Positions 2,539-62,041 of a stretch of DNA of 64,000 nucleotides are shown here, one piece after another. Below the pieces are notes generated by a model. The model was not told the DNA's origin. It saw only the letters and a program-made list of their open reading frames with translations, and did no database searches. Location of the stretch: the IMG/VR virus record IMGVR_UViG_3300033183_000491, positions 62,001-126,000 of that record; one strand, given 5' to 3'. Each line of letters opens with the position of its first letter. Position 1 is the first letter of the stretch. The position numbers and the translations under genes are program-made.

Positions 2539-3402
2539 TTACCAATCGTCGCCTAATTCTTCACTAAATATGTCAGAATCAAATACTAAATTAGGTAACT
2601 CACGTTCGGGAATTTCATTAACATCAAAGTACGGATCATCTTCATAAACATCAGGATTTTCTACTAAGTAAAGTATCTTTTTAAGAGATAGTGAATAATG
2701 ACGTCCTCTATTATACGGTGAACTATCAAAAACTGCAATTAAAAATCTTAAAGACTCAGCGTCGTTCTCATCAAACTCTGATGAGTTTGATTGGACAAAA
2801 TCTGCGAGTGTTGAAAGTTCAGTTCTCCAATCTTCTTGCGTTAAATTTTGCAAATAATTTATATAATCTTCACTTTTTTCTTCACCTGATAGTATGTTCT
2901 TAAATGAATCGTATTTATATTCATGTTCATTTTCAATAAAATTATTGACTTCTGAACTTTTTCCTAAAACTAAAGCAAATTCTTCTGTAGAAAGACTAGA
3001 CAATTGTTTAGGTGTTAATTCAGAAATTGTCTTATTTCCCTTAGAAGGTACTGTTGTGTTTTCTATAGTATTAACAGCTCTGTCTATATTATCGTTATTA
3101 ATTTCTAAATTGTTTTTTGCTAAATAAAAGCAAGTTAAAAGAGTCAAAATCTTAATTGGTACTGCATTAGTTTTATTTTTCTTTAATAAATTTTGATTGC
3201 TATTTTTTTTATCTAATTTATAATCTAGTCTATCTTTAGACTTTAATGCTTTGTTGACTTTAGATAAATCTTTTTCGCTTGGGGTAAATCCAAGTTTTTT
3301 CTTGAAAAAGTCAAGAATCCTACCTTCTATAAGAAGATCTTCTTTATTATCTTCAAAGTAAAAAAATTCTTTTATATAATTTTCTATTAATACTTCAGAC
3401 AT
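2539..3402 (-). CDS. hypothetical protein, possible internal head protein
   Basis: 287-aa ORF; N-terminal LIENYIKE...LLIEG leader, acidic C-terminus. Confidence 0.6.
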   Translation of the reverse strand: MSEVLIENYIKEFFYFEDNKEDLLIEGRILDFFKKKLGFTPSEKDLSKVNKALKSKDRLDYKLDKKNSNQNLLKKNKTNAVPIKILTLLTCFYLAKNNLEINNDNIDRAVNTIENTTVPSKGNKTISELTPKQLSSLSTEEFALVLGKSSEVNNFIENEHEYKYDSFKNILSGEEKSEDYINYLQNLTQEDWRTELSTLADFVQSNSSEFDENDAESLRFLIAVFDSSPYNRGRHYSLSLKKILYLVENPDVYEDDPYFDVNEIPERELPNLVFDSDIFSEELGDDW

Positions 3403-14972: not shown

Positions 14973-15200
14973 TTATTTATTGTTTTTTAAGTAATATTGA
15001 ACTGATTTTGTTTTTGATTTTTTGTTTTTAGAACGATGCTTTTTATCTGTTGATTTTTGATCTTTATAAATATTTTCTCCATGAGAAGCTGCAGTAGAAC
15101 CTGTACCAAGAGGGGTTGCGACTCCACCGATTGCGCCTGCACCTGAAAATTCGTTTATTAGTTTTTCTAATATTATTTCATAGATATCATCTTCTAACAT
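14973..15200 (-). CDS. small hypothetical protein
   Basis: AGGAG RBS; LINE then Gly-rich FSGAGAIGG, basic tail. Confidence 0.75.
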   Translation of the reverse strand: MLEDDIYEIILEKLINEFSGAGAIGGVATPLGTGSTAASHGENIYKDQKSTDKKHRSKNKKSKTKSVQYYLKNNK

Positions 15201-47144: not shown

Positions 47145-47170
47145 AACTTCCTCCTTATAGGATAACTTGT

Positions 47171-47222
47171 CCACATGATTCCAATGCGCTGGTGGGGTCA
47201 GCTGTTATGTTTGCATTGGGCC
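47171..47222 (-). ncRNA. candidate structured 5' leader (nested stems plus possible pseudoknot)
   Basis: CCAATGC/GCATTGG and GCTG/CAGC stems; loop CCAC complementary to downstream GTGG; GC-rich island in AT-rich DNA. Confidence 0.45.
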
Positions 47223-47657: not shown

Positions 47658-47894
47658 TTAATTTCTTTCACTAAGGCGTGAATATTCTTCCTTAATAAGA
47701 CGATTAAGATACTCAGGTGTAACTTTAACTGGTTGATTTTGAATAGCTGAATATTCTTCTTTGATAAGTCTATTAAGATACTCAGGTGTAACTTTAACTG
47801 TTTTGCTTTCTTGAAAAGATTGTCTTTTTTCCATTTTAACATTATTCATTTCTTCAAGAGCGATTCTTCTTAAGTTTTCTGCTGTAAGCTTCAT
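47658..47894 (-). CDS. small protein built of three K.T.E.L.R.I.EE repeats; likely prohead core protein
   Basis: MKLTAENLRRIALEE plus VKVTPEYLNRLIKEEYS twice (69-bp period, 47679-47800). Confidence 0.75.
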   Translation of the reverse strand: MKLTAENLRRIALEEMNNVKMEKRQSFQESKTVKVTPEYLNRLIKEEYSAIQNQPVKVTPEYLNRLIKEEYSRLSERN

Positions 47895-47906
47895 AATTTA
47901 TTTCCT

Positions 47907-48173
47907 TTATTTATCAGATTTTTTATTTAATTCTTTTTCAACTTGAGTTAGTTTAGTATCTATTTTAGCCAATGCTACTTTGATTTCTTGAACAGAGCTC
48001 AATAATTCCTGAAGGACTGATTCTGTTTGTGAAGCTCTATGTTCTAATGAAGAAACTCTCGCCTTTAGTTCTGCCATTTCTTCAGCATTTTGTTTTGAGT
48101 CTTTGTGCCACGAGTAAAATAGACCTAAGACTGACAGGACTGTTCCTACTGAAAGTACTAGATTTGGTTCCAT
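47907..48173 (-). CDS. holin-like membrane protein (N-terminal TM plus coiled coil)
   Basis: LVLSVGTVLSVLGLFYSW TM segment then heptad repeats. Confidence 0.5.
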   Translation of the reverse strand: MEPNLVLSVGTVLSVLGLFYSWHKDSKQNAEEMAELKARVSSLEHRASQTESVLQELLSSVQEIKVALAKIDTKLTQVEKELNKKSDK

Positions 48174-48224
48174 AGACTTCTCCCTAAAATCTTTATAATA
48201 ATAATTATTACTATAGAATTTATT

Positions 48225-48737
48225 TTATTTAGATATCGTCATAATAAGTGCACCTAATCCTGCACCAACGAATGCTGAAATGCTTGAAAAGATTAAAACT
48301 TTCTTTTCTTCAGAGTTTAATTTTTTCTCTAAAACTATTTTATCGAGTCTTAATTGTTCGTTTTTATCTTCAATAGTTTTAACTCTTTGGTCGCAATCTT
48401 CTTGACATTTAGCTAAATCTTCTTGACAAGATTCATCAACAACATCAACAAGTGATCCACAACTTCTTTCACACCTTTCTAAAATACCTGTAATGATTTT
48501 TCTATCTTGAATTGTTAAAATATATCCTTGATGTTTTGCTATTTCGCCTTTTAAAACAAAAGATTCGTCTCTAAATCTTTCTTTTACTATTAATTCAATA
48601 GACTTAGGTTGTGTAACTAATTCTGACCTTTTTAAGACTAACGGGTTTGACTCAAGAGTATAATTTGGAACTTGAGCTGCTGAAGATGTTATTAAAGAAA
48701 AAATGACTGTTAATGAAGTGAATATATTTTTAAACAT
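48225..48737 (-). CDS. exported Cys-containing coiled-coil protein with C-terminal TM (spanin-like)
   Basis: signal peptide ending SAA-Q, five Cys, C-terminal hydrophobic helix. Confidence 0.45.
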   Translation of the reverse strand: MFKNIFTSLTVIFSLITSSAAQVPNYTLESNPLVLKRSELVTQPKSIELIVKERFRDESFVLKGEIAKHQGYILTIQDRKIITGILERCERSCGSLVDVVDESCQEDLAKCQEDCDQRVKTIEDKNEQLRLDKIVLEKKLNSEEKKVLIFSSISAFVGAGLGALIMTISK

Positions 48738-48738
48738 T

Positions 48739-49095
48739 TTACTTGCAAACTCCTCTTATTTTACAGATTGGGCAATGAATATCAGGATCAAAATCACTCC
48801 CATTAGAAGCTTCTTCGATATCTAATGCACACTCAGCATTAAGATCTTGTCTTAATTTTTGCAAAGATTTCTTTCTTTCAGTAGCACATTTTGTTCTTTG
48901 AGTTTTAAGTTGTTCAGATAGTTTATCTCTATCTTTTGATATGTCTTCGCAAACAACAGACTTAATACAAAGAGGAGCTGTTGCTCTTCCTGCCCAAAAT
49001 GATAAAGCACCTATTACTAAAAATCCAATAAATACTTGTACTGTTTTGTCTTTTAAAAGAATTAAAAATTCTTTCGCGTTACTTAAATCAATCAT
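48739..49095 (-). CDS. N-terminal TM, Cys-rich coiled-coil protein (i-spanin-like)
   Basis: VFIGFLVIGALSFWAGR TM, coiled coil, seven Cys. Confidence 0.45.
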   Translation of the reverse strand: MIDLSNAKEFLILLKDKTVQVFIGFLVIGALSFWAGRATAPLCIKSVVCEDISKDRDKLSEQLKTQRTKCATERKKSLQKLRQDLNAECALDIEEASNGSDFDPDIHCPICKIRGVCK

Positions 49096-49185
49096 AAATT
49101 TGTCTCCTATTTAAAATTAATTATAAAACATATATTAATAATATATAATAAAGAATCATATTAATATTTTTTAAGGAGAAATAAT

Positions 49186-49626
49186 ATGAAAAAAGTAAGA
49201 ACAATTATTTTAGCACTTCTAGTATTAGTTACAACTCTTGCAGCAGGATGTGATGATGACAAAGAAAAGTCAGAAGAAGATCCTCAAGCTGGTCAAGAAG
49301 TTTCTTGTGTAGCTGGTGAAGAAGTAGTTGATCCTGACGCAGAACCTCCTGTTGAAGCTGGCGAAGAAGTAGACCTAGTTGATCCAGTAGCAGGTGAAGA
49401 ACCTCCTGTTGAGGTGGGTGAAGAAGTTGATACAGACCCTGCGGGCGAAGAAGTAGTTGAACCACAACCAGAGGCTGGTACTGAGGTTGATCCTGTAGAT
49501 CCAGAGGCTGGTGAAGAAGTTGAACCTGCTCCTGAAGCTGGTGTAGAAGAAACTACTGAAGAAGTTCCTGCGGGTGAAGCAAGTGAGCCAGTTGATCCAG
49601 CTCCTCAAGCTGGCGAGCCTGGATGA
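49186..49626 (+). CDS. lipoprotein with acidic AGEE repeats
   Basis: AAGGAG RBS; MKK, hydrophobic stretch, lipobox LAAG-C; about ten AG(E/Q/T/V)E-type units. Confidence 0.85.
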   Translation: MKKVRTIILALLVLVTTLAAGCDDDKEKSEEDPQAGQEVSCVAGEEVVDPDAEPPVEAGEEVDLVDPVAGEEPPVEVGEEVDTDPAGEEVVEPQPEAGTEVDPVDPEAGEEVEPAPEAGVEETTEEVPAGEASEPVDPAPQAGEPG

Positions 49627-49861
49627 TATAATTTATCTTTTTAACACGATTTAATCGTTTAAATTGATATTCTTCCTTAGAAGCGATGGAGCGATTCATC
49701 GCTTTTTTTATGAGAGTAAATCGACAAGGTCTTCTTGATCTTGTATATTTAGCACCTCCTTTTAATTCTCCATTATGCTGTTTTAATCTTCTTTCTGGGT
49801 CTGTTGTTATACCACAATACAAAGAATTATCATTACAGATCAAAACATATAAATACCACAA
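49553..49861 (-). CDS. small GIY-YIG nuclease (UPF0213/SLX1-like)
   Basis: YLYVL.C....LYCGITTDP.RRL.QHNG...GGAKYTR..RP, A.KEE..FK. Confidence 0.88.
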   Translation of the reverse strand: MWYLYVLICNDNSLYCGITTDPERRLKQHNGELKGGAKYTRSRRPCRFTLIKKAMNRSIASKEEYQFKRLNRVKKINYIIQARQLEELDQLAHLLHPQELLQ

Positions 49862-50008
49862 AATTCTTCCTTACGTTTCCTTCTTGTTAAAGAAAGTGTG
49901 AAAATCTAACAAGTCAATTGGCATTACGACACTCTTTATACGCTACCACACTTCTTCTTCGCATAATATATAAAGCGCATTCAATAAGGCAAGAATATCT
50001 AGATTATA

Positions 50009-50533
50009 TTAACTCTTTTTTACTTTGTAATATTTTTCTTTTGAAATTGTTGGACTAAAGAAAGCTAAACGATTACCTTCTGGGTCAATGATATGAAAAG
50101 AAGCATCTCCCCACGGGTTTTCAACAAGATCTCCTAAGGTAATATTTTTCTTTTTCATTTTATCATAAAATTTATAAACATCATTAACTTTTACTGAAAG
50201 TGATACGTTTCCATGGAAATTCTTATTTGAATAATTTCTTCTTCCTTTCGAAAACAATTCAATTAAATTTCCTCCAACATTGATTTGAGTTCCATCCCCA
50301 TCAGAATATCTCCAATACCTAACTACAGGAAACTCTAATATTTGGTTATAAAACCTAACCATTTCTTCCATGTTTTTTACATAAATATGAACTCTAACTT
50401 CACGTGAATAAGCATTCCATTTATTGGCTAAATCAATTCCGATTTCTTTTGCAGAATCAACTTCAGATTTAGTAGGTGATGTATTAATTTTTTTTACTTG
50501 TTTCTTTTTATCTTCTTGATTATAAAACGGCAT
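50009..50533 (-). CDS. VOC / glyoxalase family protein
   Basis: V.N.EE...FY..ILEF, V.DV..FY, PWGD..F.I.DPEGNRL; start likely ATG 50533. Confidence 0.88.
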   Translation of the reverse strand: MPFYNQEDKKKQVKKINTSPTKSEVDSAKEIGIDLANKWNAYSREVRVHIYVKNMEEMVRFYNQILEFPVVRYWRYSDGDGTQINVGGNLIELFSKGRRNYSNKNFHGNVSLSVKVNDVYKFYDKMKKKNITLGDLVENPWGDASFHIIDPEGNRLAFFSPTISKEKYYKVKKS

Positions 50534-50534
50534 A

Positions 50535-50912
50535 TTACTTTTCTTTCTTTTCTCCACCTAAAGGATATTTTTTCCAAGCAAACTTTTCCCTATTATCTAA
50601 ATAGTAATCTAAATCATCACAGTTCCATGCTTCTTGTTCAAATCTTATAGATAAGTAAGATTCTCTATTAAAACCTTTTCTGCATAAAATAGAAGCCCAG
50701 AAATAATCAAATAAATAAACTGCTATAAATCCAATAAACCAAAGCTCTTTATATTGCAAATAATGAATTGTCTCGTGTCTTTTAGTTCTATCAGATAATT
50801 CTCCTTGACAAAACACCCATGGACCTAATGTTATCGCCCATATCTCTATTGGAGCAAATTTACTTAAATAAACAGGGACTTTGCTGTTTTCAAAAAACTT
50901 TGGATATTTCAT
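50535..50912 (-). CDS. HExxH-containing hypothetical protein
   Basis: AITLGP, RHETIH..Q, Y..I.FEQEA. Confidence 0.75.
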   Translation of the reverse strand: MKYPKFFENSKVPVYLSKFAPIEIWAITLGPWVFCQGELSDRTKRHETIHYLQYKELWFIGFIAVYLFDYFWASILCRKGFNRESYLSIRFEQEAWNCDDLDYYLDNREKFAWKKYPLGGEKKEK

Positions 50913-50913
50913 G

Positions 50914-51141
50914 TTAATAACTATTTAAAATTTCTTCGTCTTCAAATGAAATTGATGTATCTATATCGTCTCCTGATAAATCTTCATCTTCTGGAGCTTC
51001 TTCATTTTCAAACTCAGGTCCTTTAGAAGGCTCTTCTTCACCTAATGGGTCTTCTCCAAACTCATTAAAACTAGGTCTTTCTTCAGTGTCTTCTTTTAAA
51101 AATTTTCTCCAAGATTCCATTATAAGTTTTGTATTATTCAT
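50914..51141 (-). CDS. small acidic protein with KLIMESWRKFL.E leader
   Basis: 75-aa ORF. Confidence 0.7.
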   Translation of the reverse strand: MNNTKLIMESWRKFLKEDTEERPSFNEFGEDPLGEEEPSKGPEFENEEAPEDEDLSGDDIDTSISFEDEEILNSY

Positions 51142-51169
51142 TTTTTAACTTCTTTCTTTTAAATATTTA

Positions 51170-52918
51170 TTAATAGTCATCGCCAAAATCAAAATCATCA
51201 TATGATGGTATTTCAAAATCGTCATATAAATCTTCGTCATCTCCCATTAAATCGTCTTTTAGCTTTCTATAATATTCTTCTTCTTCTTCTGGAGACATTT
51301 CTTCTTTTTTCGAAGAAGATTTTATTTTTTTATAAACTATATTTTTAAATTTATCTGAAAGTGGTGAAACTGTTTCGAGATTTTCTAGGATTTTATCAAT
51401 TATTCCAATACAAAGATTTTTGTCTTCTTGACTATCAATAAAATCATCAAAAGAATAAGTAACTCCAAATCCATCATCAGATCTAGATAATTCTTCAATT
51501 TCACCTTCAACTTCATCTGTCAAATAATTTAAACTAGTTTTACATTGAACGTCACTTTTAATTATAGGATATTGATTATATAAATCTAATATTGCTCTAG
51601 ATTTAAATAATAATGTAAATAGATGCAATCCTAATGATGAATTGAATTTTCTTATTTTAGAAACAACGTCAGATTCTCCCGGGATTGTTGTTATAACATT
51701 CATTTCGCATAATTTAATCTCGTCAATAACTAATTTTAAGCATTCAACGATTGTGCTATTTTTATTTTCGCTCTTTAAATTGTCAACGAATTCTTTAATT
51801 TCATTTTTTAATTTTTCGTAAGCTTCGGGAGATTTAATCATAATTCCACTTGATTCATATGATCCAAAATCAATAACGTTTAAATTTGGGTCTTCTGAGT
51901 CAACTGAATAGAGAGATTTTTTAGCAAAGTGAATAAAATTATTCTTGTCCCAAATAAAATTATTTGCATCTTCAAGTAATCTAGGATCACTAGATGCATC
52001 TTCTTTAATTTTTTCTAAAGCCATACTATAAGATTCAGATAATTCTGGTGTAGAATTAGAAGTTAACTCAGACTTAAGTCTATTATAGAAATTATCTGTT
52101 ACATATTCTCCACAAATGTCATCATTAAAAGCATCAACAGATGCTCCACCATTTAATTCTGGTTCAATTCTGTTTTTGTAAGCTTTAAATCCAATACAAA
52201 CTTTTCTAAATTCATCATCTCCTCTAAAGATATTATTATTTTTAACAATATAATAAAGATTTATTTTGTCTCTTTCATAATAATCTTCAAAGAGATTTGC
52301 TTTACCTGTTTTTGCTGTACACCAAGTTATTTTAGGACCTTTTACTCCTCGAGGCGCATCTTTTTCTCTTGTTCCATCATACATTCCATGAGCCCATGCC
52401 ATTGATCCAACTATATTTAAAGGTTTTACAGCGACGATATTTTCATCTTTGTAAACAATTTTTGCATTTGTTGGATTATTCATAATATAATCACTTACAG
52501 CTTTAGTGATACCAGACTTTTCACCTGAGTCTTGAATATCGTAATCTAAATCGATAATACTATAGTTTCCTGAAATGAGATCAGATTTATCTTCTTGTTT
52601 TAATGAATTAAACTTTGTCTTACTATGTAAGATACAAACAGAGATTCTTTCTAAGAGAGATAAAGAAGAATCAGATTCAACTAAGTCTTGCAATAAAACA
52701 TTTTGATAATTTACTAATTCTTTATGATGTTGTCTTATTAAGTCAATACTAGAATCCAATGAATCATCAGTAGACCACTTTTGTTTAATTCTTTCTACAA
52801 AATCTTTAAGTTTATATGCTTCATTTAAAAGACTTTTGTCAGATTTAACATTAATATCATTATAAAGATATTCTCTCCAACCTTCTAATAAAACTTTAAT
52901 ATTTTTATTTGACTCCAT
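51170..52918 (-). CDS. hypothetical protein with PcfJ-like WCT motif and LLEGWREYL leader
   Basis: VAVKP....S...TWCTA....N.F..Y....LYY. Confidence 0.65.
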   Translation of the reverse strand: MESNKNIKVLLEGWREYLYNDINVKSDKSLLNEAYKLKDFVERIKQKWSTDDSLDSSIDLIRQHHKELVNYQNVLLQDLVESDSSLSLLERISVCILHSKTKFNSLKQEDKSDLISGNYSIIDLDYDIQDSGEKSGITKAVSDYIMNNPTNAKIVYKDENIVAVKPLNIVGSMAWAHGMYDGTREKDAPRGVKGPKITWCTAKTGKANLFEDYYERDKINLYYIVKNNNIFRGDDEFRKVCIGFKAYKNRIEPELNGGASVDAFNDDICGEYVTDNFYNRLKSELTSNSTPELSESYSMALEKIKEDASSDPRLLEDANNFIWDKNNFIHFAKKSLYSVDSEDPNLNVIDFGSYESSGIMIKSPEAYEKLKNEIKEFVDNLKSENKNSTIVECLKLVIDEIKLCEMNVITTIPGESDVVSKIRKFNSSLGLHLFTLLFKSRAILDLYNQYPIIKSDVQCKTSLNYLTDEVEGEIEELSRSDDGFGVTYSFDDFIDSQEDKNLCIGIIDKILENLETVSPLSDKFKNIVYKKIKSSSKKEEMSPEEEEEYYRKLKDDLMGDDEDLYDDFEIPSYDDFDFGDDY

Positions 52919-52962
52919 TATACACCTTATTACTATACAACGTTTTTATTATATAATATATA

Positions 52963-54360
52963 TTAACTCAGTAACCATATATTACTCCCGCATCCCCAAA
53001 CTTTATATAGATTCATTTCAAAAGCTTTTTCTCTTTCGCATTTATTAAGATCTGACTTAACAATAAATCTATCATACCTTTGTCTCCCGTCAGTATACCA
53101 ATAATCGATACCTGTTTCGCCATAATATTTAAAGCCTACTTTTTCATATCCTAATCCTTCACCAAATCTTCGATCTGCATAAGTCATCAAAGGATATTCA
53201 TAGTTTTCTTTAAATCTTTTTAAAAGTTTTCCTAATCCACCAACAACAACAGTATTTAGTTTAGAAGCAAACCTGCTTATTTCATAATAACCTTTCCATT
53301 TCTTTTGTCTAGGTTTTCTAAATCCAATAGCTGATATTAATTCTTCTTTATAAAACAATCCAAGTCTAATACTACTATTAACAGATCCACTAATATGACT
53401 CTTATTCATAAAAAGATCAAACTCTTTTTTACCAATTTCTTTAACAACACATTTTCTTGCCCATATCTTATTACAAAGTCCAAGTCTATTATTAATCATA
53501 CTTTTGCAGATCTCTCTTTTATATTCCCATTCATCAGAGAATATATGCATTAACTTCATCCCTAAAGACTTACATTCTTTTGTTTTCCAAATCATATCTT
53601 CTTTGTTTGTCGAATCAACAACTTCAGAGTGCCAATATAAACCATTATATTCAATTCCAAAATTCTTCTGTTTTAATGAAATGTCGATTTCTTTAGGTTT
53701 AATCAAATTTCTATCTCCATTAATAACAGAATCAAATCCTAAACTTTTTACATATTCATATATTTCTATCTCAGCTGCGCTTTTATTTATTGGATAACAC
53801 TTAGGACATAATGATCCTCTTTCAAATGATTGCAAAGTTTTCTTACAAATAAAATTACATTTTTTACATTTAAATTCTAAATACTGATGTTGTCTACTGA
53901 AATATTCTTCGACAGGTGTTAATATTTCAAATTCTTCATTTCTATCTAAGATTCTTTGTAAAACTTCGTAGCTTCCTAATTGTTTAGTCATGCTAATTCT
54001 ATTTTTAGTTTTTGATGTATGTTTCTTTCCCCAGAAAGGATTATCTTTACCTGACAAGCCTTTTATTCTATCATCGTCTAATTTTGTTTTTCCTTTATTC
54101 CAAGACTCAGACTTACCGCCTTTTTTCCCGCCTTCTTTCATTGCAAGTTTTCCACAATCTTTACAATATTTTTTAAAAGAAAACGCTACATACCTAGTCT
54201 CTTTTCCACAATTAAAGCATCCCTTGTAATCTTTGCAAATATATTCTCTTGTGTATTCTTTACTACTTAATTTATGTTCACTTCTCAAGTGATTACTAAA
54301 TTTTTTTCCTTCACCCTCAAAATCACATAAATAACATTTCATATCATTATACCTTTTCAT
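52963..54360 (-). mobile_element. Hef-like (Vsr/PD-(D/E)XK) homing endonuclease with Zn fingers and NUMOD3 repeats
   Basis: CxxC pairs, SWNKG, NPFWGKKHT, S.AE.EI, EIDI.....IEYNGLYWH, FSDEW, ARKC, YADRR...G..Y...GF. Confidence 0.82.
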
Positions 54361-54382
54361 GGTCTTTGTATAAATATCAAAT

Positions 54383-54411
54383 ATTATAAATTTAATTTTT
54401 CTTTTTTACAA
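54383..54411 (-). promoter_or_regulatory. promoter TTGTAA-17-TATAAT
   Basis: upstream of the endonuclease, immediately after the capsid terminator. Confidence 0.7.
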
Positions 54412-54414
54412 TAC

Positions 54415-54438
54415 AAAAAAACCAGCAAAAGCTGGTTT
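54415..54438 (-). terminator. intrinsic terminator after the major capsid gene
   Basis: AAACCAGC-4nt-GCTGGTTT plus T run; same core stem as at 14013-14032. Confidence 0.82.
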
Positions 54439-54474
54439 AATGTCACCCTAGGGTGCTAGCCACCAAAACTTATC

Positions 54475-56283
54475 TTAGATAACGTTCATGTCGAGGCATG
54501 TAACTGTTCCGTAGAAGTCAGCGCGGACCATCTTCTTACCGTAACGAGTCATAACACCCTTACGTGGTGTGAAATCCTCTGGTTGGAAGATGGTTGGTGT
54601 TACGATGAGTGGTACGTATGGAGCATAAACGAAGCCAGTCTCTAGGTAAGAACCACCTTTGTAACCAACGAGGATCTTGTTGCGTGGGAAGTATGGGTCT
54701 TTGTAAACTGTGAAACGGTTTGAAAGTGAACCAACCTTCTCTGCACCCATTGTGAAAGGAGCACCAACTTGTCCGTCACCGTCAAGGCTGTAGCTTGGGC
54801 GGTAAAGAACAGAAGCTTCAAGGATTGTAGCAACATCAGGAGAAACCACGATGAAGTTAGCAGAACCACGAAGAGTCTTTCTGTGGATTTCATTAGCAAC
54901 GTCGATAACAGTCTCTGTTAGGGTCTCATACCATTCACGAACTGTACCAGTGAATGCTGGACCAGGGGTGAGTGTAGAAGCACGTGCAATCTCTGCACCT
55001 GTACGCTTGTTAACGAATTTACCAGGTGAACGACTCCAGAAGAAGTTAGCACCTTGTGCACCTGTAAGAAGATCGCCAAGAATCTCACGATCGATTTCAA
55101 GAGCAATCTGCTCTGAAAGGATTTGTGTGAGCTCGACCTCTGCATCCATTGAGTGGTATGCGTTAAGGTCTTGCGCAAGCTCAGGACTCCAACGAGCACG
55201 GAGCTTACGTGTTTGTGCTGTTACTGGGATTGACTCGATCTTAATATCAATCTCTGGGATTGCAGATGGGTTAAGATCAGTAGGAGTTTCTGGCTGCAAG
55301 AATTCCATTGCTGGATCAACATCAACACCACCAACGCTGTTAGCAATACCTTCTGCACCATCAGCAGCTACGTATTCAACTGCTAAGACATTAAGATTAT
55401 TGTCAGCGCCACCTTTTGCTCTTAAAGCTTCTGTTGATGAGGTAGCACTTGTTTGAACGAGGAAAAGAACTCTATCACCAGCAACTGCATCAGCTTTAAA
55501 TAATGCGAGTGTATCACCTGTACCAACCTTTGAAACTTTTCTTACATTGTGTGAAAGACCACCTTGAAGTTTTTGCGCTGCAGAAATTTCAACAGAAATA
55601 GCAGCTGCATCATCTTCAATTGTTGCTTTTGCTGTCTTAATAAGAGAAAGATCAGCACCTGTAAGTGAAGATGTCGGACATAGAACAAATTGGAATGTGC
55701 TGCTCGAAGCTGCATCAATAACTGCTGAGTCATAATCAACAAGTGCTAAGTGAACTGCGTCAGTTGGATCAAATTTTGCAGTCTCTAAAAGAGCACCGTG
55801 AGCAACGTCTACAGATTTATGCTCGCGAGAGAAACCACTACCTACAAGATCGTATTGACCACCAAGAGCGTCAGCGCCACCTTGAATAGCCTTACCTGAA
55901 GGGCCACCATAGATTGACTCAGTTGTTTGGTGAGGACCTTCAACTGAACCGTATGTGTAATCTAGGTAGAAAAGGAGACCGCTTGGAAGGCTCATTGGTT
56001 GAATTGAAACGAGTTCATTTGCAATAAGACCACCAAAAACACGACGAACGATTGGGAATGCAATGTTTGAGAAACCACCAACATCGCCGCCATTCATTGT
56101 GCTGCTTTCGCGAAGAACTTGAGCAGCTTGGTTTTCTAGAAGAGTAGCCATGTTTTCACGGCTTGTTTCTTCCATGCCACGGAGAAGACCAGTGCGAGAC
56201 CATTTCTCAACGAGGCGCTTATTTTGTTGGCCTACGTGGCGGTCTCTAATACCTTCAGTTAACTTTTGTAATGAAAAACTCAT
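54475..56283 (-). CDS. major capsid protein (T4 gp23-like)
   Basis: KW..TGLL, LLENQ, PIVRR, VSIQPM..PSGL.F, RKLRA.WS.E.AQDL.AYH..DAE.EL, YAPYVP, F.PRKGVMTRY. Confidence 0.97.
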   Translation of the reverse strand: MSFSLQKLTEGIRDRHVGQQNKRLVEKWSRTGLLRGMEETSRENMATLLENQAAQVLRESSTMNGGDVGGFSNIAFPIVRRVFGGLIANELVSIQPMSLPSGLLFYLDYTYGSVEGPHQTTESIYGGPSGKAIQGGADALGGQYDLVGSGFSREHKSVDVAHGALLETAKFDPTDAVHLALVDYDSAVIDAASSSTFQFVLCPTSSLTGADLSLIKTAKATIEDDAAAISVEISAAQKLQGGLSHNVRKVSKVGTGDTLALFKADAVAGDRVLFLVQTSATSSTEALRAKGGADNNLNVLAVEYVAADGAEGIANSVGGVDVDPAMEFLQPETPTDLNPSAIPEIDIKIESIPVTAQTRKLRARWSPELAQDLNAYHSMDAEVELTQILSEQIALEIDREILGDLLTGAQGANFFWSRSPGKFVNKRTGAEIARASTLTPGPAFTGTVREWYETLTETVIDVANEIHRKTLRGSANFIVVSPDVATILEASVLYRPSYSLDGDGQVGAPFTMGAEKVGSLSNRFTVYKDPYFPRNKILVGYKGGSYLETGFVYAPYVPLIVTPTIFQPEDFTPRKGVMTRYGKKMVRADFYGTVTCLDMNVI

Positions 56284-56326
56284 ATGTTTTATCCTTTATT
56301 TATATAAATTAAATCTGTTAAAATTC

Positions 56327-57868
56327 TTAGTTCTTAATACCAGCAAGAGTTGCCCAGCGATCAAGTGCAGCAGATTCATTTAGAGTTTGTGCACTACGAA
56401 CAGGTTGTGAAGAAGAGTTAAGTGGTCTTCTTACAGAACCTTCTGCTAAGTTATTCTTCCTAGTTGGGTTTGCAATTGACTTAGAGAGGCTTTCAAATAG
56501 GATTTTAGCTTCACCAAGTGTTTTTGCGTTGTCGAGAGACTCAACAATGTGACGTTGTTGTTTCATTGAGAGTTCTCTGTTTTGCATGAGCTTGTTAGCG
56601 TAAAGAAGCTTCGCGTTGAATAGGTTCATTTCAGTGAGTTGGTCCTTCATTCCACGAAGAGCCTTTTTGTATTGAGAAAGCTTGCTTTCTAGCATACGAT
56701 TCATGCGTACAACTTTTGCAGCTTTAGTTTTCATCTCGTGCAATTTGTTAAGTTCAACACCATCAACAAATGCCTCACCCTCAATAGAACCTCCTCCAAA
56801 GTGTGAAGCTACATCTTTTGCTTCACCTTCACGAAGAGCCTTCATTCTACCAATTTCTCTTTTAAGCATATTTTCATCGATTTCTAGAATACGATCACGT
56901 GATTCGTACATACCTTCTTCTTTTGGCTCTTCTTCACCTTCTTCTTCACCTTCTTCTTCACCTTCTTCTTCAGAAGGTTTCTCAGTTTCGAAAAGAGCTT
57001 CGTCGATTTCAAGTTCTAGTTCTTCGCCAACATTCTCGTCTTCTTCAACAAGACCTGCAGCAATTGCTAATTCACGAACTGTAGTCTGGTCGGTGATTTC
57101 TAGTTCTTCACCTTCTTCTTCGACTTCTTCGACTTCTTCGACTTCTTCGACTTCTAGATCTTCATCTGCTTCTGCAGGTTGTTCCTCAGGAGCTTCTTCA
57201 CCAGCTTCATCTCCTGGAAGATCTGCAGCTTCATCACTTAAATCTAGTTCTTCTTCGTCACCGTCAGCTTCAAATAGATCCATCTCTAAAAGATCTGACA
57301 AGCTTTCGTTAAGATATTTACTATTAGAACGTCTTCTAGACATATTCTCTATCTCCTTGTTTAATTTATAGAATTCTTTTAAAAGTTCTTTATCACTTCT
57401 AATTATACTGTTTGTTTTTAAATTTGTTACTTCATTAAGTAAATTTTTATATAGAACAACAACTCTAGGTTTAGTCTGATGAAATAAGTTAGAGCTTTCT
57501 GATATTGTTATTGCCTTTTGAAGCGATTTAAGACTCTCTTTAAGAGATTCTAGTTTTTGGTGAGCTGCTTCTTTTTTTGCATTAGAATTAATTAATTTGT
57601 TTAATATTCTTCTAGACTCTGCATTAAGTTCAACTTTGTTTTCTTCTGTTTCTTCAACAGATTCATAATTGCTGCACTCTTCTGTCGTTTCTTCAGATTC
57701 TTCGACAGGACTATCAGTTTCTTCTTTTGATTCAAATAATCTTTTCTCAACTAAACTTTTGATTTGTGGAGAAATAGATTCAACAATATGTTGTTTGACC
57801 TTTTCTTCAGCAGCAAGTTTAATTTCTTCTGCAGCTTTAATTGCTTCGTTATATAATGTACTACTCAT
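56327..57868 (-). CDS. prohead core scaffold protein (gp22-like)
   Basis: upstream of capsid gene; acidic coiled coil, E.NL.NAKLLY.N, RW..LAGI C-terminus. Confidence 0.85.
   Translation of the reverse strand: MSSTLYNEAIKAAEEIKLAAEEKVKQHIVESISPQIKSLVEKRLFESKEETDSPVEESEETTEECSNYESVEETEENKVELNAESRRILNKLINSNAKKEAAHQKLESLKESLKSLQKAITISESSNLFHQTKPRVVVLYKNLLNEVTNLKTNSIIRSDKELLKEFYKLNKEIENMSRRRSNSKYLNESLSDLLEMDLFEADGDEEELDLSDEAADLPGDEAGEEAPEEQPAEADEDLEVEEVEEVEEVEEEGEELEITDQTTVRELAIAAGLVEEDENVGEELELEIDEALFETEKPSEEEGEEEGEEEGEEEPKEEGMYESRDRILEIDENMLKREIGRMKALREGEAKDVASHFGGGSIEGEAFVDGVELNKLHEMKTKAAKVVRMNRMLESKLSQYKKALRGMKDQLTEMNLFNAKLLYANKLMQNRELSMKQQRHIVESLDNAKTLGEAKILFESLSKSIANPTRKNNLAEGSVRRPLNSSSQPVRSAQTLNESAALDRWATLAGIKN
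56928..57155 (-). repeat. coding tandem repeats in the scaffold gene (EEEG x3-4; EEV x4)
   Basis: 12-bp unit at 56928-56972 and 9-bp unit ttcttcgac at 57116-57151. Confidence 0.85.
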
Positions 57869-57928
57869 GATAAAACCTATAATTTATATTATTTATATAT
57901 ATTAGAATTTTTGTTTTTTTATTAAACA

Positions 57929-58786
57929 CTAAATTTGTTTAACAATTCCTGCTCTTAAATTATCCAAAAATTCTTGATCAGACGTTGCATTTAAAATTTC
58001 AAAAGAAGATAATTTACCATTTTCTAAACTATTATAGTTAAATTTCGATAAAGGTGTATCAATAGTTTCTTCTCCCGAAGTTGTAGGAGTCATATCAATT
58101 TCAATGTCACCTTTAGGAGTACTTCCTTTAATTTTTACTTTGACTTTTTTTTGTCCGTAACCTTTATTATTAATACCATGACGTCCTGTGGGAAGATGTC
58201 CTGGAGGTGCTGCGTTTGCAGTATTTGTTGAAGCCATTGCATTTTTATACATGCTTCCTTTACCAGTAGACCTAACTGCAATACTTCCACTCATATATTT
58301 TTCAGACAAGATAACTTCTTTTATATAATCTTTAAGGTCGTTTTCCATTAAAGTATTCCCTTGGATTTCATGTCCTGCAGAAAGTCCTATAACACCAGCA
58401 ATACTATTTCCTAGGCCACCTAAACTAGAGATATCTGTACCTTTTTTAGCTAAACTATCTGATGCTCTTCTCTGGTATGATGTATGAGCTTTACTTTCAA
58501 TATCAGATTCGAATTCATTAAAATCAGATTCATTATCTCCAATAAGACCTGCATATAAAGCTAAATCTTTTACTGTAGTTTGAGAATTTATTTTGTAACT
58601 TTTTGTTTCTAATTCTTCTTCATCCCATTGGCCTTTTGGAGAGCTTAAAGCGTCACCCATATTCCAATTAGAACCAATTCCTTTACCGGGGCCTCCACCT
58701 AAAGATCCAATTCCTAATCCCGTTCTAGAATCGTAATTAAACGACCCTCCGAAAGAATTAGGATTAGTTGAACTGAAATTAGACAT
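57929..58786 (-). CDS. hypothetical Gly-rich head-region protein
   Basis: 285-aa ORF sharing a motif with the scaffold. Confidence 0.75.
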   Translation of the reverse strand: MSNFSSTNPNSFGGSFNYDSRTGLGIGSLGGGPGKGIGSNWNMGDALSSPKGQWDEEELETKSYKINSQTTVKDLALYAGLIGDNESDFNEFESDIESKAHTSYQRRASDSLAKKGTDISSLGGLGNSIAGVIGLSAGHEIQGNTLMENDLKDYIKEVILSEKYMSGSIAVRSTGKGSMYKNAMASTNTANAAPPGHLPTGRHGINNKGYGQKKVKVKIKGSTPKGDIEIDMTPTTSGEETIDTPLSKFNYNSLENGKLSSFEILNATSDQEFLDNLRAGIVKQI

Positions 58787-58799
58787 ATCTTCTTAAATC

Positions 58800-59381
58800 T
58801 TATTCAGGTTGAGAGTAATTAATGTTTGGATCTTCTGAAGGGTTTTTAGCTTCACCTAAAACTGGTCGAGATACATTTGAATTAACGCCTGATGAGTTAT
58901 AGTGAGAACTAAAATAAGTTCCTATTGTTGAAGCTTGAGTCCCTGGCTCATTTCTATCATCTCTCCAACCAAAACCTTTATTCTGTCTTTCAGCAGGAAT
59001 TGTAGCAACTCCACTAGTTTCAGCTGTAAGATTATTAATGTCTGGCGCAATAAGATTTGGACCTTTTCTAGACGGTTTATCTTTTGCACTTCCTAGATCA
59101 TCATACATTGAAAGAGCATTACCATGTGCAAAGTCAATTGCAGGAATAAAATCAGGGTTTCCACTTTCACCGGGTAAAGAAGAATCTAAACTATTCATTG
59201 TATTTACTGATGCAGTAAGTATTTCTGATCTCATATCGGGAAAAAGAAGACTTGATTGAGATGCAACTCCCATTGTACTAGTACTTCCATTTTGATATGA
59301 TTCTCTTTGGCGCTCTATTTGTTTATTAAATGTTGTTGCATTAACAAAGTCTTCAGCACCTGATTTTCTATATCCAGCCAT
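58800..59381 (-). CDS. hypothetical head-region protein
   Basis: 193-aa ORF, likely largely disordered. Confidence 0.75.
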   Translation of the reverse strand: MAGYRKSGAEDFVNATTFNKQIERQRESYQNGSTSTMGVASQSSLLFPDMRSEILTASVNTMNSLDSSLPGESGNPDFIPAIDFAHGNALSMYDDLGSAKDKPSRKGPNLIAPDINNLTAETSGVATIPAERQNKGFGWRDDRNEPGTQASTIGTYFSSHYNSSGVNSNVSRPVLGEAKNPSEDPNINYSQPE

Positions 59382-59412
59382 AATAAAGCCCTTTCAGAGT
59401 TAAAATAAAAAC

Positions 59413-59703
59413 TTATATACCTTTAATTATACGTCTTCTAAGCTCTCTTTTAACTTCTTGAAGAGTTTTTAGTTCTTCAACCATTTTAGCTTCTTTGATT
59501 TTACATGCTTGATAATAGTCCATACATTGTGCAAGACTATTAGCATAATCAGATGGGCCAACCTCTTTTACTTTGTTACTAACCTCTGAAGGGTGTTTTG
59601 CTTTTAACTCAAGTGTTTCATTAAGAAGATCTTTCTCTTCTAAGACCATTCTTCTAATTGTTTCAGGTGTAACTTTAATAAGCTTTTCTCTATTTCTAGA
59701 CAT
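59413..59703 (-). CDS. hypothetical protein with KVTPE.IRR.V.EE motif
   Basis: GGAG RBS; motif shared with the 47658 gene. Confidence 0.78.
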   Translation of the reverse strand: MSRNREKLIKVTPETIRRMVLEEKDLLNETLELKAKHPSEVSNKVKEVGPSDYANSLAQCMDYYQACKIKEAKMVEELKTLQEVKRELRRRIIKGI

Positions 59704-59785
59704 AAATTAACTCCATTAATTGTATTTTCATTAATTAATATATTCTTAAATATATCTAAAAAAATAAATTTTATTTTATTCAACA

Positions 59786-60202
59786 TTATTTATCCGAAAA
59801 TGCTAATGATGCCCAATTACTTGATGATCCACCAAACATTTCCATTGGGTCACTTTCGCTAACTGCTTGGCTAAAAACATCGATATTTTTTGCTGAAAAT
59901 TTGTTTGGTTGGTCAGCAGTGTTTTGCTCTTGTAAAGTTGTTTGCGCAGTATCTTCTAAAATCGAAGCCATAACAGGATCTTTTGTTGCTTGAGATATAA
60001 TCTGTTTTGTTTTCTTTTCAAAGTTTGGATTTAACACCTTGTTTGAAGATTCTTTTTTAACAGAGACATTTTCGTAATTACTTTTAACATTAAGACTTTC
60101 ATTTAGAGAAGTTGTATCTCCTTCACTAAGACCTTCAGCTAACAGTTCTACTAAACACTCTTTTACAATGCTTTTAAGCATACTTCTACTTACTTTTGCC
60201 AT
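59786..60202 (-). CDS. hypothetical protein with LKSIVKEC leader
   Basis: 138-aa ORF in the head operon. Confidence 0.78.
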   Translation of the reverse strand: MAKVSRSMLKSIVKECLVELLAEGLSEGDTTSLNESLNVKSNYENVSVKKESSNKVLNPNFEKKTKQIISQATKDPVMASILEDTAQTTLQEQNTADQPNKFSAKNIDVFSQAVSESDPMEMFGGSSSNWASLAFSDK

Positions 60203-60208
60203 TAATCA

Positions 60209-60607
60209 TTAACTCCAGTCTAACATTGACTCTGGGACAGATTTAGAAGAATCAATATGAGTTAACCCAGCTATTACACTTACAGTAGCATTCACTGTTG
60301 TTTTTACCCATATTTTAGAACATCTTAACTCTAATCTTAAAATATGAGTATCAGCAGGAACAGTAAAGTATTGATCTGCAATGGGTTGGTCAACGTTAGG
60401 TTCATCAGCTGCAGCAGTAAAATATACATCGACTGCGACATTTGATGAAATCGTTATCCATCTAGTTACTCTTGGAAATTCAAAAGTATCTACAGTATTA
60501 TTAATAGACTTTGTTTTACAAAAAGGCAAACCACTAAGTTGATATTCGGGAACACTTGTAGCACTTGGACTTGGCCATCTTGTGTTATTTATATTATGAT
60601 CAGACAT
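60209..60607 (-). CDS. putative virion protein
   Basis: start ATG 60607 coupled (TAATG) to the protease stop; VPEYQLSGLPF, FP.VTRWI beta-rich. Confidence 0.7.
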   Translation of the reverse strand: MSDHNINNTRWPSPSATSVPEYQLSGLPFCKTKSINNTVDTFEFPRVTRWITISSNVAVDVYFTAAADEPNVDQPIADQYFTVPADTHILRLELRCSKIWVKTTVNATVSVIAGLTHIDSSKSVPESMLDWS

Positions 60608-61209
60608 TATTTCCACTCCAATATATCATTGAATATTCTATCTATTCTGTCTGACTTGTTAAAGACATTATTAATTGCATTTGGTTCAATCTCTTTTCCT
60701 TCACGCATCATAAATGCACCAGGAGTTGAAGGTTCAGAAACAAAATCCCAACATATTAATTGAAAATCATCCTGAACGATTTGCATGTCACCTTGCGTTC
60801 TAGTACTTCCAACACCCCTTGAAGAAATACCTAATGTGACTCCACTTTCAACCAAAGACTGAAGTATTTTTCCACTAGGAGTATTTAGAATTTCTACTGT
60901 ACCATAGACAATATTACCTTCCATGTAAGCTTCTTTAATATTATGTGAAGCGTTTTTTAATTCAACAACAGAAGAATCTGGATGGTCTAGTTCACCAAGA
61001 GCTCTATTTTCTTTAATAAACTTTTGATAATTTGTGATTTCTCTTTCAAGGATATTACGAGGATAAACTCTACCATTTTGATTAAGAGTTTCTGCTTTTT
61101 GGAGAATCCCTTTCATAATCAAAGGTTGACCTTTTTCTCTTTGTTCTTTAATAATCTTTGGGTCATATTCAAAATTAACCCATTCTGTGATAAGTCTTTG
61201 AGCTCCCAT
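60607..61209 (-). CDS. prohead core protease (T4 gp21-like)
   Basis: NQNGRVYP, ALGELDHP, SH.I, TPSG, GISSRGVGS, DFVSEPSTPGA. Confidence 0.95.
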   Translation of the reverse strand: MGAQRLITEWVNFEYDPKIIKEQREKGQPLIMKGILQKAETLNQNGRVYPRNILEREITNYQKFIKENRALGELDHPDSSVVELKNASHNIKEAYMEGNIVYGTVEILNTPSGKILQSLVESGVTLGISSRGVGSTRTQGDMQIVQDDFQLICWDFVSEPSTPGAFMMREGKEIEPNAINNVFNKSDRIDRIFNDILEWK

Positions 61210-61210
61210 T

Positions 61211-62041
61211 TTAATCTCCTAGTACTTCTTCTTTTAATTTGCCAATTGTTAAAAATCTTTGTAAGTTTTCTTTTGACATATCATTAATGTCTAAATTAGA
61301 TATGTTTCTTTTAACTTCGTTATATTTTTCTAATAGTATTTGATTGTTACAATCACTTATATAATTTTCTAGGAGGTGATTACAAGAATTTTTAACTGCC
61401 TGATATTTTTGAGATAGATTATCTTCATTATCTTTAATGTAAAGAGAGATTATTTCTCTTTGTGTTTCGTTGAGTTTTGAACTATATTTTTTCTCAAACA
61501 TTTCATTCATTATTTTATAAGTAAGTTTGTCAACTTTTTTCGGAGTAATTTCATTAGAAATAAGTTCTCTTTTACTTGTTAAATTTTCATGAAGTTTTAT
61601 TTCATATTCAGTTACAATGTCAAATTGAGGAGATTGATTTCTCCATTCATTTAATAGTGTCTGAATTGTTGCATATCGTCTATAGTCTTTAACTTTTCTT
61701 TCGAATATAACACCTTTTCCAAAAGTATAGTTTAAATCTCTTATTAAAGTAGATTTTTCTTCTTCTAAAATTTTATTGTCAAACATATGATTACAAGCTT
61801 TTTTAGCTTCTTTAATAATAGATGTAGCTAAAGTATCAGAAATCTCTTGAGTTTCTGAAAGTGCTTTGAATAACTTGTATTCTTTAAATAATTGTGATCC
61901 TTCTTTGAAATTATTTTTAATAATATCAATTGCAGCTTCGGCATTAGATTTATCATTTTCCATTAGACTTTCACAAACAAAATTAATAATTTGTTCATAT
62001 ATAATTCCAATGTTTCTTTTTTTATTATGATTCTTCGCCAT
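61211..62041 (-). CDS. hypothetical protein between portal and protease
   Basis: HNKKRNIG..YE N-terminus; start likely 62041 or 62044. Confidence 0.75.
   Translation of the reverse strand: MAKNHNKKRNIGIIYEQIINFVCESLMENDKSNAEAAIDIIKNNFKEGSQLFKEYKLFKALSETQEISDTLATSIIKEAKKACNHMFDNKILEEEKSTLIRDLNYTFGKGVIFERKVKDYRRYATIQTLLNEWRNQSPQFDIVTEYEIKLHENLTSKRELISNEITPKKVDKLTYKIMNEMFEKKYSSKLNETQREIISLYIKDNEDNLSQKYQAVKNSCNHLLENYISDCNNQILLEKYNEVKRNISNLDINDMSKENLQRFLTIGKLKEEVLGD

What the first reader, a model, noticed from the sequence alone, without database searches (positions are those of the whole stretch)
47658..60202. Shared amphipathic leader plus (L/I)xE site: a putative capsid-loading address system
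Seen: KLTAENLRRIALEE and KVTPEYLNRLIKEE x2 (47658), KVTPETIRRMVLEE (59413; 16 bp identical at 59663-59678), KVSRSMLKSIVKE (59786), LKDYIKE (57929), LIENYIKE (2539), KLIMESWRKFL (50914), KVLLEGWREYL (51170). Most are followed by LNE/LIE/LKE; the scaffold and capsid (VLRE-S) have similar sites. Established: T4 gp21 cleaves after (L/I)xE and removes capsid-targeting sequences. Inference: a portable tag that loads unrelated cargo into the prohead, with the 47658 protein as a tag-only trimeric linker.
Basis: partly seen in the sequence, partly recalled or inferred. Interest (0 to 1): 0.62.

Follow-up and report, generated by a model that had tools for sequence, protein, structure and literature searches.

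The report
Shared N-terminal leader on phage proteins
A 240-kb uncultured T4-like jumbo phage puts short N-terminal helices ending in (I/L/V)-x-Glu on many otherwise unrelated proteins. This most likely works like a greatly expanded version of phage T4's capsid-targeting tag, but no experiment has tested that.

Summary
They are three leader classes, not one motif.

- Class A (K-[VIL]-T..L.R..[LK]EE): the 78-, 96- and 138-aa proteins in the window, plus three genes elsewhere in the genome.
- Class B (..ENYIKE..): the protein at 2539, plus at least six outside the window.
- Class C (LL.E.W[RK].[FY]L): the proteins at 50914 and 51170, plus others outside.

Beyond the leader the proteins are unrelated. 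Two whole relatives each carry 45-46 such genes (13% of ORFs), mostly starting MKITKRQLKRIIRE. Codon usage shows selection on the peptide, not the RNA.

All 112 leaders end in [ILV]-x-Glu, most often at residue 14. This matches the conserved L-[RK]-E site of the capsid protein's propeptide. The phage encodes a T4 gp21-type protease, and two leader proteins sit in the head operon in all relatives examined.

The T4-style reading (capsid targeting sequence, CTS, removed by the prohead protease) is the best explanation, at about 0.5, but untested. The "tag-only trimeric linker" idea is not supported: homologs of the 78-aa protein have two copies plus a basic tail, and the third copy is a recent 69-nt duplication.

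The parts
47658..47894 (-). 78-aa protein with three class-A motif copies (residues 2-15, 34-48, 57-71). Copies 2 and 3 are a 69-nt tandem duplication.
   Evidence: In the homolog family, M1, T4, L8, R10, E14, E15 and the second motif are invariant.
59413..59703 (-). 96-aa head-operon protein with the class-A leader at residues 10-24, followed by LNE and TLE sites.
   Evidence: In 28 orthologs only Met1 and the leader's Glu23 are invariant.
59786..60202 (-). 138-aa head-operon protein with the leader at residues 3-17, followed by a run of VKE/LVE/LAE/LSE sites.
   Evidence: Across 29 orthologs the N-terminal 26 residues are more conserved than the rest (0.70 against 0.42). No known family.
57929..58786 (-). 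285-aa head-operon protein with an internal class-B-like motif at residues about 151-162 (nt about 58301-58336).
   Evidence: The match is weak (6.5 bits) but conserved. It is C-terminal in distant orthologs.
2539..3402 (-). 287-aa protein with a class-B leader at residues 4-18. Cargo unknown.
   Evidence: 20.6 bits. Only 3 close homologs in 5.8 billion proteins.
14973..15200 (-). 75-aa protein with a weak class-B-like N-terminus.
   Evidence: 5.5 bits only.
50914..51141 (-). 75-aa acidic protein with a class-C leader at residues 5-18.
   Evidence: 28.3 bits.
51170..52918 (-). 582-aa protein with a class-C leader at residues 8-21. Trp14 and Leu18 are invariant in orthologs, and a conserved L-x-N-E-A site follows at about residues 28-33.
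   Evidence: The paralog at genome 52622 is the only cargo similarity found among leader proteins. The AF2 model was poor.
60607..61209 (-). Prohead protease, Peptidase_S77 (T4 gp21 type). It is the presumed enzyme that cuts after the leader's Glu.
   Evidence: PF03420 1.7e-28; phrog_207 2.6e-51. The N-terminal LLTEW is conserved in 31 orthologs.
56327..57868 (-). 513-aa scaffold-like protein, acidic and helical, with 23 [LI]xE sites.
   Evidence: Its position between the core genes and the capsid gene is conserved in relatives. [LI]xE density is 4.5 per 100 aa, against a proteome median of 1.4 and a shuffled value of 3.1 +/- 0.65. A TATAAATA motif lies upstream.
54475..56283 (-). Major capsid protein (gp23 family) with conserved LLE (48-50) and L-R-E (57-59) sites ahead of a variable Gly/Ser linker.
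62025..63830 (-). T4-type portal (gp20 family), at the start of the head operon.

Best explanation
The window lies in a complete 239.5-kb T4-like jumbo phage from a large uncultured clade. The phage attaches short N-terminal amphipathic helices of about 12-18 residues to otherwise unrelated proteins: about 16-21 in this genome and 45-46 in two relatives. The helices come in three sequence classes and end in [I/L/V]-x-Glu.

The most likely function is that of T4's capsid targeting sequence (CTS). The helix would dock the protein into the scaffolding core of the assembling prohead. The gp21-type protease would then cut after the Glu, freeing the cargo inside the head, from where it could be injected with the DNA.

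The 96-aa and 138-aa leader proteins in the head operon, and probably the 78-aa protein, would be core components. Like T4 gp67 and gp68, they would be chopped at several (L/I)xE sites.

Shown: the leaders, their N-terminal position, selection on the peptide, the terminal Glu, the unrelated and variable cargo, the head-operon membership, and the protease, scaffold and capsid context.

Inferred: docking, cleavage, packaging and injection.
For: 1. N-terminal similarity is far above controls. Pairs scoring 35 or more: 27 against 3 (middle) and 0 (shuffled) in this genome; 242 against 3 and 0, and 338 against 2 and 1, in relatives G001 and G002. In T4 itself the same test recovers only IPII/IPIII and Alt/alt.-1 as leader-type pairs.
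2. Cargo is unrelated. There is no BLAST similarity past residue 25 except for one pair. 65 class-A proteins fall into 54 clusters.
3. Selection acts on the peptide. Leu8 uses five different codons, Ile12 and Glu14 are 38/38, and only a ribosome-binding site is conserved upstream.
4. 112 of 112 leaders have [ILV]xE with the Glu at residues 10-23 (56 at residue 14), against 34% of other proteins. P2 is often K or R, as in the capsid protein's conserved L-[RK]-E site.
5. An S77 protease, a gp23-type capsid protein and a gp20-type portal are present. The scaffold and neighbouring small proteins are 3-fold enriched in [LI]xE.
6. The 96-aa and 138-aa leader proteins lie between protease and scaffold in all relatives examined. 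In the 96-aa family the leader's Glu is the only invariant residue besides Met1.
7. One leader-tagged protein in a relative matches the Alt/Mod ADP-ribosyltransferase family (phrog_832, 2.9e-8). T4 Alt is a packaged protein processed by gp21.
8. Cargo is more variable between genomes than size-matched genes (24% against 38% conserved, p=0.004), as with the T-even internal proteins.
Against: - There is no direct evidence of cleavage, packaging or binding. The only complex prediction (protease with the 96-aa N-terminus) gave no answer.
- No leader class resembles T4's MKTYQEFIAE beyond a short aromatic-I-x-E stretch in class B.
- Cargo is mostly acidic (median pI 5.0), unlike the basic T4 internal proteins.
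- Some cargo looks like ordinary cytoplasmic enzymes: P-loop kinases, PAP2, HD, and a PNK/HAD-like protein.
- Most strong leader genes outside the head operon lack the TATAAATA late-promoter motif seen before the capsid and scaffold genes.
- Class C does not end in a strict [LI]xE in the 582-aa protein; the nearest conserved site is about 10 residues later.
- 45 packaged species per genome would be many.
- The [ILV]xE count is partly circular, because the set was defined by N-terminal similarity.
Confidence: 0.5

Rival explanations
1. The helix is a docking or localisation tag for something other than the capsid, such as the membrane, a phage hub protein or an enzyme assembly. The terminal [ILV]xE would then simply reflect an amphipathic, charged helix.
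For: Class A is a textbook basic amphipathic helix. Cargo includes kinase- and phosphatase-like enzymes. Most leader genes lack the late-promoter motif. Cargo is acidic.
Against: This does not explain why two leader proteins are fixed in the head operon next to the protease. It also does not explain why the Glu is the only invariant residue of the 96-aa family, or why the site matches the capsid propeptide site.
Confidence: 0.2
2. The leader is only a removable propeptide, for example one that keeps enzymes or toxins inactive until the phage protease cuts it. It would have no addressing role.
For: The Glu and the P3 Ile/Leu are conserved. Zeta-toxin-like and ADP-ribosyltransferase-like cargo occur.
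Against: Twelve or more conserved residues upstream of the site are more than a gp21-type site needs. T4 requires only L/I-x-E. The protease is thought to act only inside proheads, which is established for T4, so substrates must get there.
Confidence: 0.12
3. The shared 5' ends are DNA- or RNA-level elements, either recombination linkers for swapping gene cassettes or a translational operator. They would not be a functional peptide.
For: There is a 16-nt identity between two genes. Leader genes occur in tandem arrays.
Against: Synonymous codons vary freely while the amino acids are fixed, and no nucleotides are conserved upstream beyond the ribosome-binding site. The two repeat units of the 78-aa gene differ at 5 of 56 nt without any change in the peptide.
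Confidence: 0.04
4. The similarities are chance, or leftovers of one diverged paralog family.
For: The motifs are short and the genome is AT-rich, so Lys, Ile, Glu and Asn are common.
Against: Shuffled and internal-segment controls give 0-3 pairs, against 27-338 observed. Cargo regions show no similarity.
Confidence: 0.02

Closest known systems
Phage T4 capsid targeting sequence (CTS) of internal proteins IPI/IPII/IPIII and Alt
   Same: A short N-terminal propeptide shared by otherwise unrelated, fast-evolving proteins. It ends in L/I-x-Glu, and the phage has a gp21-type protease, a gp22-type scaffold and a gp23-type capsid protein.
   Different: - The sequences are not alike: a basic 14-mer or ENYIKE-type helix against MKTYQEFIAE.
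- There are 16-46 genes per genome, against 3-4 in T4.
- There are three leader classes.
- Cargo is mostly acidic and includes enzyme-like proteins.
- Nothing has been tested experimentally.
T4 prohead core proteins gp67 and gp68
   Same: Small proteins encoded beside the protease gene. They are rich in (L/I)xE sites and presumably degraded during maturation.
   Different: No detectable homology. Here the genes lie downstream of the protease gene rather than upstream. The 78-aa protein is not in the head operon.
Propeptides of inner-body and ejection proteins of phiKZ, 201phi2-1 and SPN3US
   Same: Jumbo phages with a gp21-like protease that cuts after Glu, and dozens of head-internal proteins.
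   Different: Those propeptides are mostly longer than 100 residues and are not one shared short leader. The cleavage motif is (S/A/G)-x-E, and the capsid lineage is different.
Encapsulin cargo-loading peptides
   Same: A short portable peptide addresses unrelated cargo into an HK97-fold shell (general knowledge).
   Different: They are usually C-terminal, bind the shell protein directly and are not removed. There is no sequence relation.

Membership tests
T4-type CTS / internal-protein system | The phage encodes a gp21-type (S77) prohead protease, a scaffold and a gp23-type capsid protein. | tested here: met
   PF03420 1.7e-28, PF07068 7e-78, PF07230 1e-79. The scaffold is identified by position and composition only.
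T4-type CTS / internal-protein system | A short (10-20 aa) N-terminal peptide is shared by otherwise unrelated proteins. | tested here: met
T4-type CTS / internal-protein system | The peptide ends in an L/I-x-Glu protease site. | tested here: met
   112/112 at the sequence level, with Glu most often at residue 14. Class C is looser.
T4-type CTS / internal-protein system | Sequence similarity to the T4 CTS. | tested here: not met
   The T4 sequences were read from NC_000866. There is no similarity beyond aromatic-I-x-E in class B.
T4-type CTS / internal-protein system | The leader is cleaved by the prohead protease. | not testable with these tools
   The complex prediction gave no answer.
T4-type CTS / internal-protein system | Cargo is found inside proheads or virions and is injected. 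| not testable with these tools
   No cultured relative. The 96-aa and 138-aa proteins have no match in GenBank phages.
T4-type CTS / internal-protein system | Cargo consists of small basic DNA-associated proteins. | tested here: not met
   Median pI 5.0; 62% are below 5.5.
T4 gp67/gp68 prohead core proteins (for the 96-, 138- and 78-aa proteins) | Encoded in the head operon next to the protease gene. | tested here: met
   Met for the 96- and 138-aa proteins in all relatives examined. Not met for the 78-aa protein, which lies 6.6 kb beyond the capsid gene.
T4 gp67/gp68 prohead core proteins (for the 96-, 138- and 78-aa proteins) | Sequence homology to gp67 or gp68. | tested here: not met
   No Pfam or PHROG match. 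The T4 sequences were read.
phiKZ-type inner-body propeptides | Long (>100 aa) propeptides and an (S/A/G)-x-E motif. | tested here: not met
   The leaders are 12-18 aa, with P3 = I/L/V (PMC5694885).

The most novel reading that the evidence does not exclude
In this clade of marine-type jumbo T4-like phages, up to 13% of genes encode a leader-defined 'injectome'. On this reading, dozens of fast-evolving effectors, including kinase-, phosphatase- and ADP-ribosyltransferase-like enzymes, are loaded into the head. Loading would work by a helix that co-assembles with the two leader-bearing core proteins of the head operon, and the prohead protease would then release the cargo. The packaged proteome of uncultured phages could then be read directly from sequence, and the 14-residue tag would be a programmable packaging signal.
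Probability: 0.35. Interest if true: 0.75.

Novelty: new variant of a known kind. Interest (0 to 1): 0.6.

Why it matters
If the leaders are capsid-targeting tags, three things follow:
- A simple N-terminal profile would name the head-internal, probably injected, proteins of an uncultured jumbo-phage clade. At least 597 related IMG/VR stretches exist.
- Internal-protein cargo would be shown to expand from 3-4 genes in T4 to about 45.
- New short tags would be available for packaging foreign proteins.

If they are not, then an unexplained addressing signal marks one gene in eight in these phages. That would be interesting in itself.

Tried and rejected
- **Pfam and PHROG scans** of all motif proteins found no family.
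- **tblastn against GenBank phages** with two 25-aa leaders and with the 96- and 138-aa proteins gave no match. Short queries cannot reach significance in 2.3 Gb.
- **Full-text search** for leader strings found no papers.
- **Complex prediction**, protease with residues 1-45 of the 96-aa family, using own alignments: no answer, score 0.01. This is not evidence either way.
- **Class C resembling the protease's own N-terminus.** LLTEW here and LLIETW in T4 gp21 looked like class C. However, a profile of 31 protease N-termini does not retrieve class-C leaders (2.6 bits at best). The resemblance is therefore unsupported.
- **T4 Alt, ModA and ModB** by BLAST and phmmer against the three proteomes were weak. 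Only the PHROG profile gave a significant ADP-ribosyltransferase hit.
- **Late-promoter analysis.** TATAAATA precedes the capsid, scaffold and large structural genes, but precedes only two weak leader genes. This does not decide the matter, because in the T4 record the IP and alt genes lie on the opposite strand to head genes 20-23.
- **AlphaFold2 of the 582-aa cargo** with a 6-row alignment gave mean pLDDT 54. It was not fold-searched.
- **ESM Atlas search** for the 138-aa protein returned only viral 'hypothetical protein' clusters.
Full report
**Context.** The window is bases 62001-126000 of a 239,550-bp IMG/VR virus record with direct terminal repeats, estimated complete. GC content is about 30%.

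On the minus strand it carries a T4-type head operon:
- portal, 62025-63830 (PF07230);
- a 283-aa protein;
- an S77/gp21-type prohead protease, 60607-61209;
- proteins of 135, 138, 96, 193 and 285 aa;
- a 513-aa acidic scaffold-like protein, 56327-57868;
- a gp23-family major capsid protein, 54475-56283;
- a homing endonuclease.

The capsid protein is at most 40% identical to anything in GenBank phages. The best matches are an uncultured megaphage and Rhodothermus phage RM378. In contrast, at least 597 IMG/VR stretches encode relatives; the 80 kept are 56-81% identical. This is therefore a large uncultured clade of T4-like jumbo phages.

A strict class-A pattern occurs five times in the whole genome, only in the 78-, 96- and 138-aa proteins. 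A small HMM scores these at 24-28 bits, and nothing else scores above 5.

To avoid cherry-picking, I compared residues 2-21 of all 275 ORFs of at least 60 aa with each other. 27 pairs score 35 or more. Residues 31-50 give 3 pairs (true paralogs), C-termini give 9, and shuffled N-termini give 0.

The pairs fall into three classes:
- **Class A.** This covers the three window proteins plus three genes outside the window that start MKITE(R/T)(R/K)LR and end I-[KL]-E.
- **Class B.** This has an ENYIKE-type core. It includes the protein at 2539 and at least six others outside the window.
- **Class C.** This has an LL.E.W[RK].[FY]L core. It includes the proteins at 50914 and 51170, plus one or two outside.

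True members score 12 bits or more and are all N-terminal. The internal LKDYIKE of the 285-aa protein and the N-terminus at 14973 are weak, at 5-7 bits. Past residue 25 the proteins share no BLAST similarity, except for the 582-aa protein and one paralog.

**Relatives.** In all relatives examined, orthologs of the 138-aa and 96-aa proteins sit between protease and scaffold and keep the leader.
- In the 96-aa family (28 sequences), the only invariant residues are Met1 and the Glu that ends the leader.
- In the 138-aa family, the first 26 residues are much better conserved than the rest.

I fetched two relatives whole, G001 (273 kb) and G002 (289 kb). The same unbiased test gives 242 and 338 N-terminal pairs, against 3 and 2 for internal segments and 0 and 1 for shuffles. 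Single-linkage clustering yields one cluster of 45 and one of 46 proteins, about 13% of ORFs. These start either MKITKRQLKRIIRE or MK.LRQYIRKILLE and are often arranged in tandem arrays.

The exact class-A core occurs in 117 IMG/VR stretches, mostly on contigs of 100-290 kb, with up to eight copies in 10 kb. All four such contigs that I could test carry the same capsid lineage.

As a positive control, T4 itself (130 kb analysed) gives only IPII/IPIII and Alt/alt.-1 as leader-type pairs. The other high-scoring pairs there are Seg/Mob endonuclease paralogs.

**Peptide or nucleic acid?** In 38 class-A leaders the amino acids are nearly fixed: Ile12 and Glu14 are 38/38 and Ile11 is 37/38. Codons vary freely, with Leu8 encoded by five different codons. 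Upstream only a ribosome-binding site is conserved. The two repeat units of the 78-aa gene differ at 5 of 56 nt and encode the same peptide. Selection therefore acts on the peptide.

**Link to the protease.**
- All 112 leader proteins of the three genomes have [I/L/V]-x-Glu with the Glu at residues 10-23, and 56 have it exactly at residue 14. Only 34% of other proteins have such a site there. The count is partly circular, because the set was defined by N-terminal similarity. P2 is often Lys or Arg.
- The capsid protein's N-terminal region carries conserved LLE and [VLI]-L-[RK]-E sites just before a linker of variable length. This is the position where T4 gp23 is cut, judging from the alignment anchor and the review.
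- [LI]xE density is 4.5 per 100 aa in the scaffold and 4-5 in the 78-, 96-, 138- and 277-aa proteins. The proteome median is 1.4, and composition-matched shuffles of the scaffold give 3.1.

This is the pattern expected of substrates of a gp21-type enzyme, which in T4 cuts after L/I-x-Glu and removes 10-19-residue targeting propeptides (PMC9026906; PMC3012670).

**Cargo.**
- 65 class-A proteins fall into 54 clusters once the leader is removed.
- Only 24% have a homolog in another of the three genomes, against 38% of size-matched genes (p=0.004).
- Most have no family. Of 38 larger ones, Pfam finds two AAA_33 kinases, a Zeta-toxin-type kinase, a PAP2 and an HD domain.
- One 285-aa protein of G001 matches the Alt/Mod ADP-ribosyltransferase PHROG at 2.9e-8. 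T4 Alt is itself a packaged protein processed by gp21.
- Cargo is mostly acidic, unlike the T4 internal proteins.

**The 78-aa protein.** Thirteen homologs exist among 5.8 billion proteins, all unnamed. In the 11 aligned, the ten more distant ones have two motif copies, nine with an Arg-rich tail. Only the window protein and its two closest relatives have a third copy in place of the tail, produced by a 69-nt tandem duplication. The 'trimeric linker' idea has no support. A small core or filler protein that is cut to pieces, as T4 gp67 is, seems more likely, but this is inference.

**Interpretation.** The best-supported reading is a T4-style capsid-targeting and processing leader. It is greatly expanded and differs in sequence from T4's.

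I put this reading at about 0.5, for these reasons:
- Nothing shows cleavage or packaging.
- Some cargo looks like ordinary enzymes.
- Most leader genes lack the TATAAATA motif that precedes the capsid and scaffold genes.
- Class C fits the cleavage rule less well.

The rivals are a non-capsid docking helix (0.2), a pure propeptide (0.12), a DNA- or RNA-level element (0.04, contradicted) and chance (0.02, contradicted).

Noticed in passing
window 52963-54360 (-): A 465-aa homing-endonuclease-like ORF (phrog_3339/559) sits directly downstream of the capsid gene. T4 similarly has segD between genes 23 and 24.
   Followed up: partly
window about 56297-56304 and about 57890-57897: The T4-type late-promoter motif TATAAATA lies 14-21 nt upstream of the capsid start and 22-29 nt upstream of the scaffold start. 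It also precedes two very large structural ORFs elsewhere in the genome.
   Followed up: partly
window 17200-42773 (-): Seven very large ORFs of 949-1457 aa lie in a row. Three of them share a GP..RGPAFVP stretch near residues 31-50, so they are paralogs, perhaps fibre or tail proteins.
   Followed up: no
window 49186-49626 (+) and 49553-49861 (-): On the opposite strand there is a lipoprotein-like ORF with a signal peptide and a Cys, followed by acidic AGEEV-type repeats. It overlaps the end of a small GIY-YIG-like ORF.
   Followed up: no
L068 4526-6217 (record G003): In one relative the prohead protease ORF is 563 aa. The S77 match is split into residues 4-86 and 70-200, which suggests an insertion (intein-like?) inside the protease gene.
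   Followed up: no
G009 C1:176278-180147: A complete 293-kb relative has two tandem capsid-protein genes, 63-64% identical to the query, like the T4 gp23/gp24 pair. The window's own genome has only one.
   Followed up: no
L120 (IMG/VR contig labelled GVMAG-S-1030632-100): A 17-kb contig filed as a giant-virus MAG carries three class-A leaders. It is probably a mis-binned phage of this clade.
   Followed up: no
window 57929-58786 against L018 7458-7958 and L063 7402-7947: The 285-aa head-operon protein appears extended or fused in this lineage. In distant relatives the protein ends at the leader-like motif, and a separate 72-75-aa basic ORF follows.
   Followed up: partly
window 46710-47174 (-): A 154-aa protein has a Pro/Glu/Val-rich repeat (PEPAPEPAPVVEPVAEPV-type) and a basic N-terminus. 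Its function is unknown.
   Followed up: no
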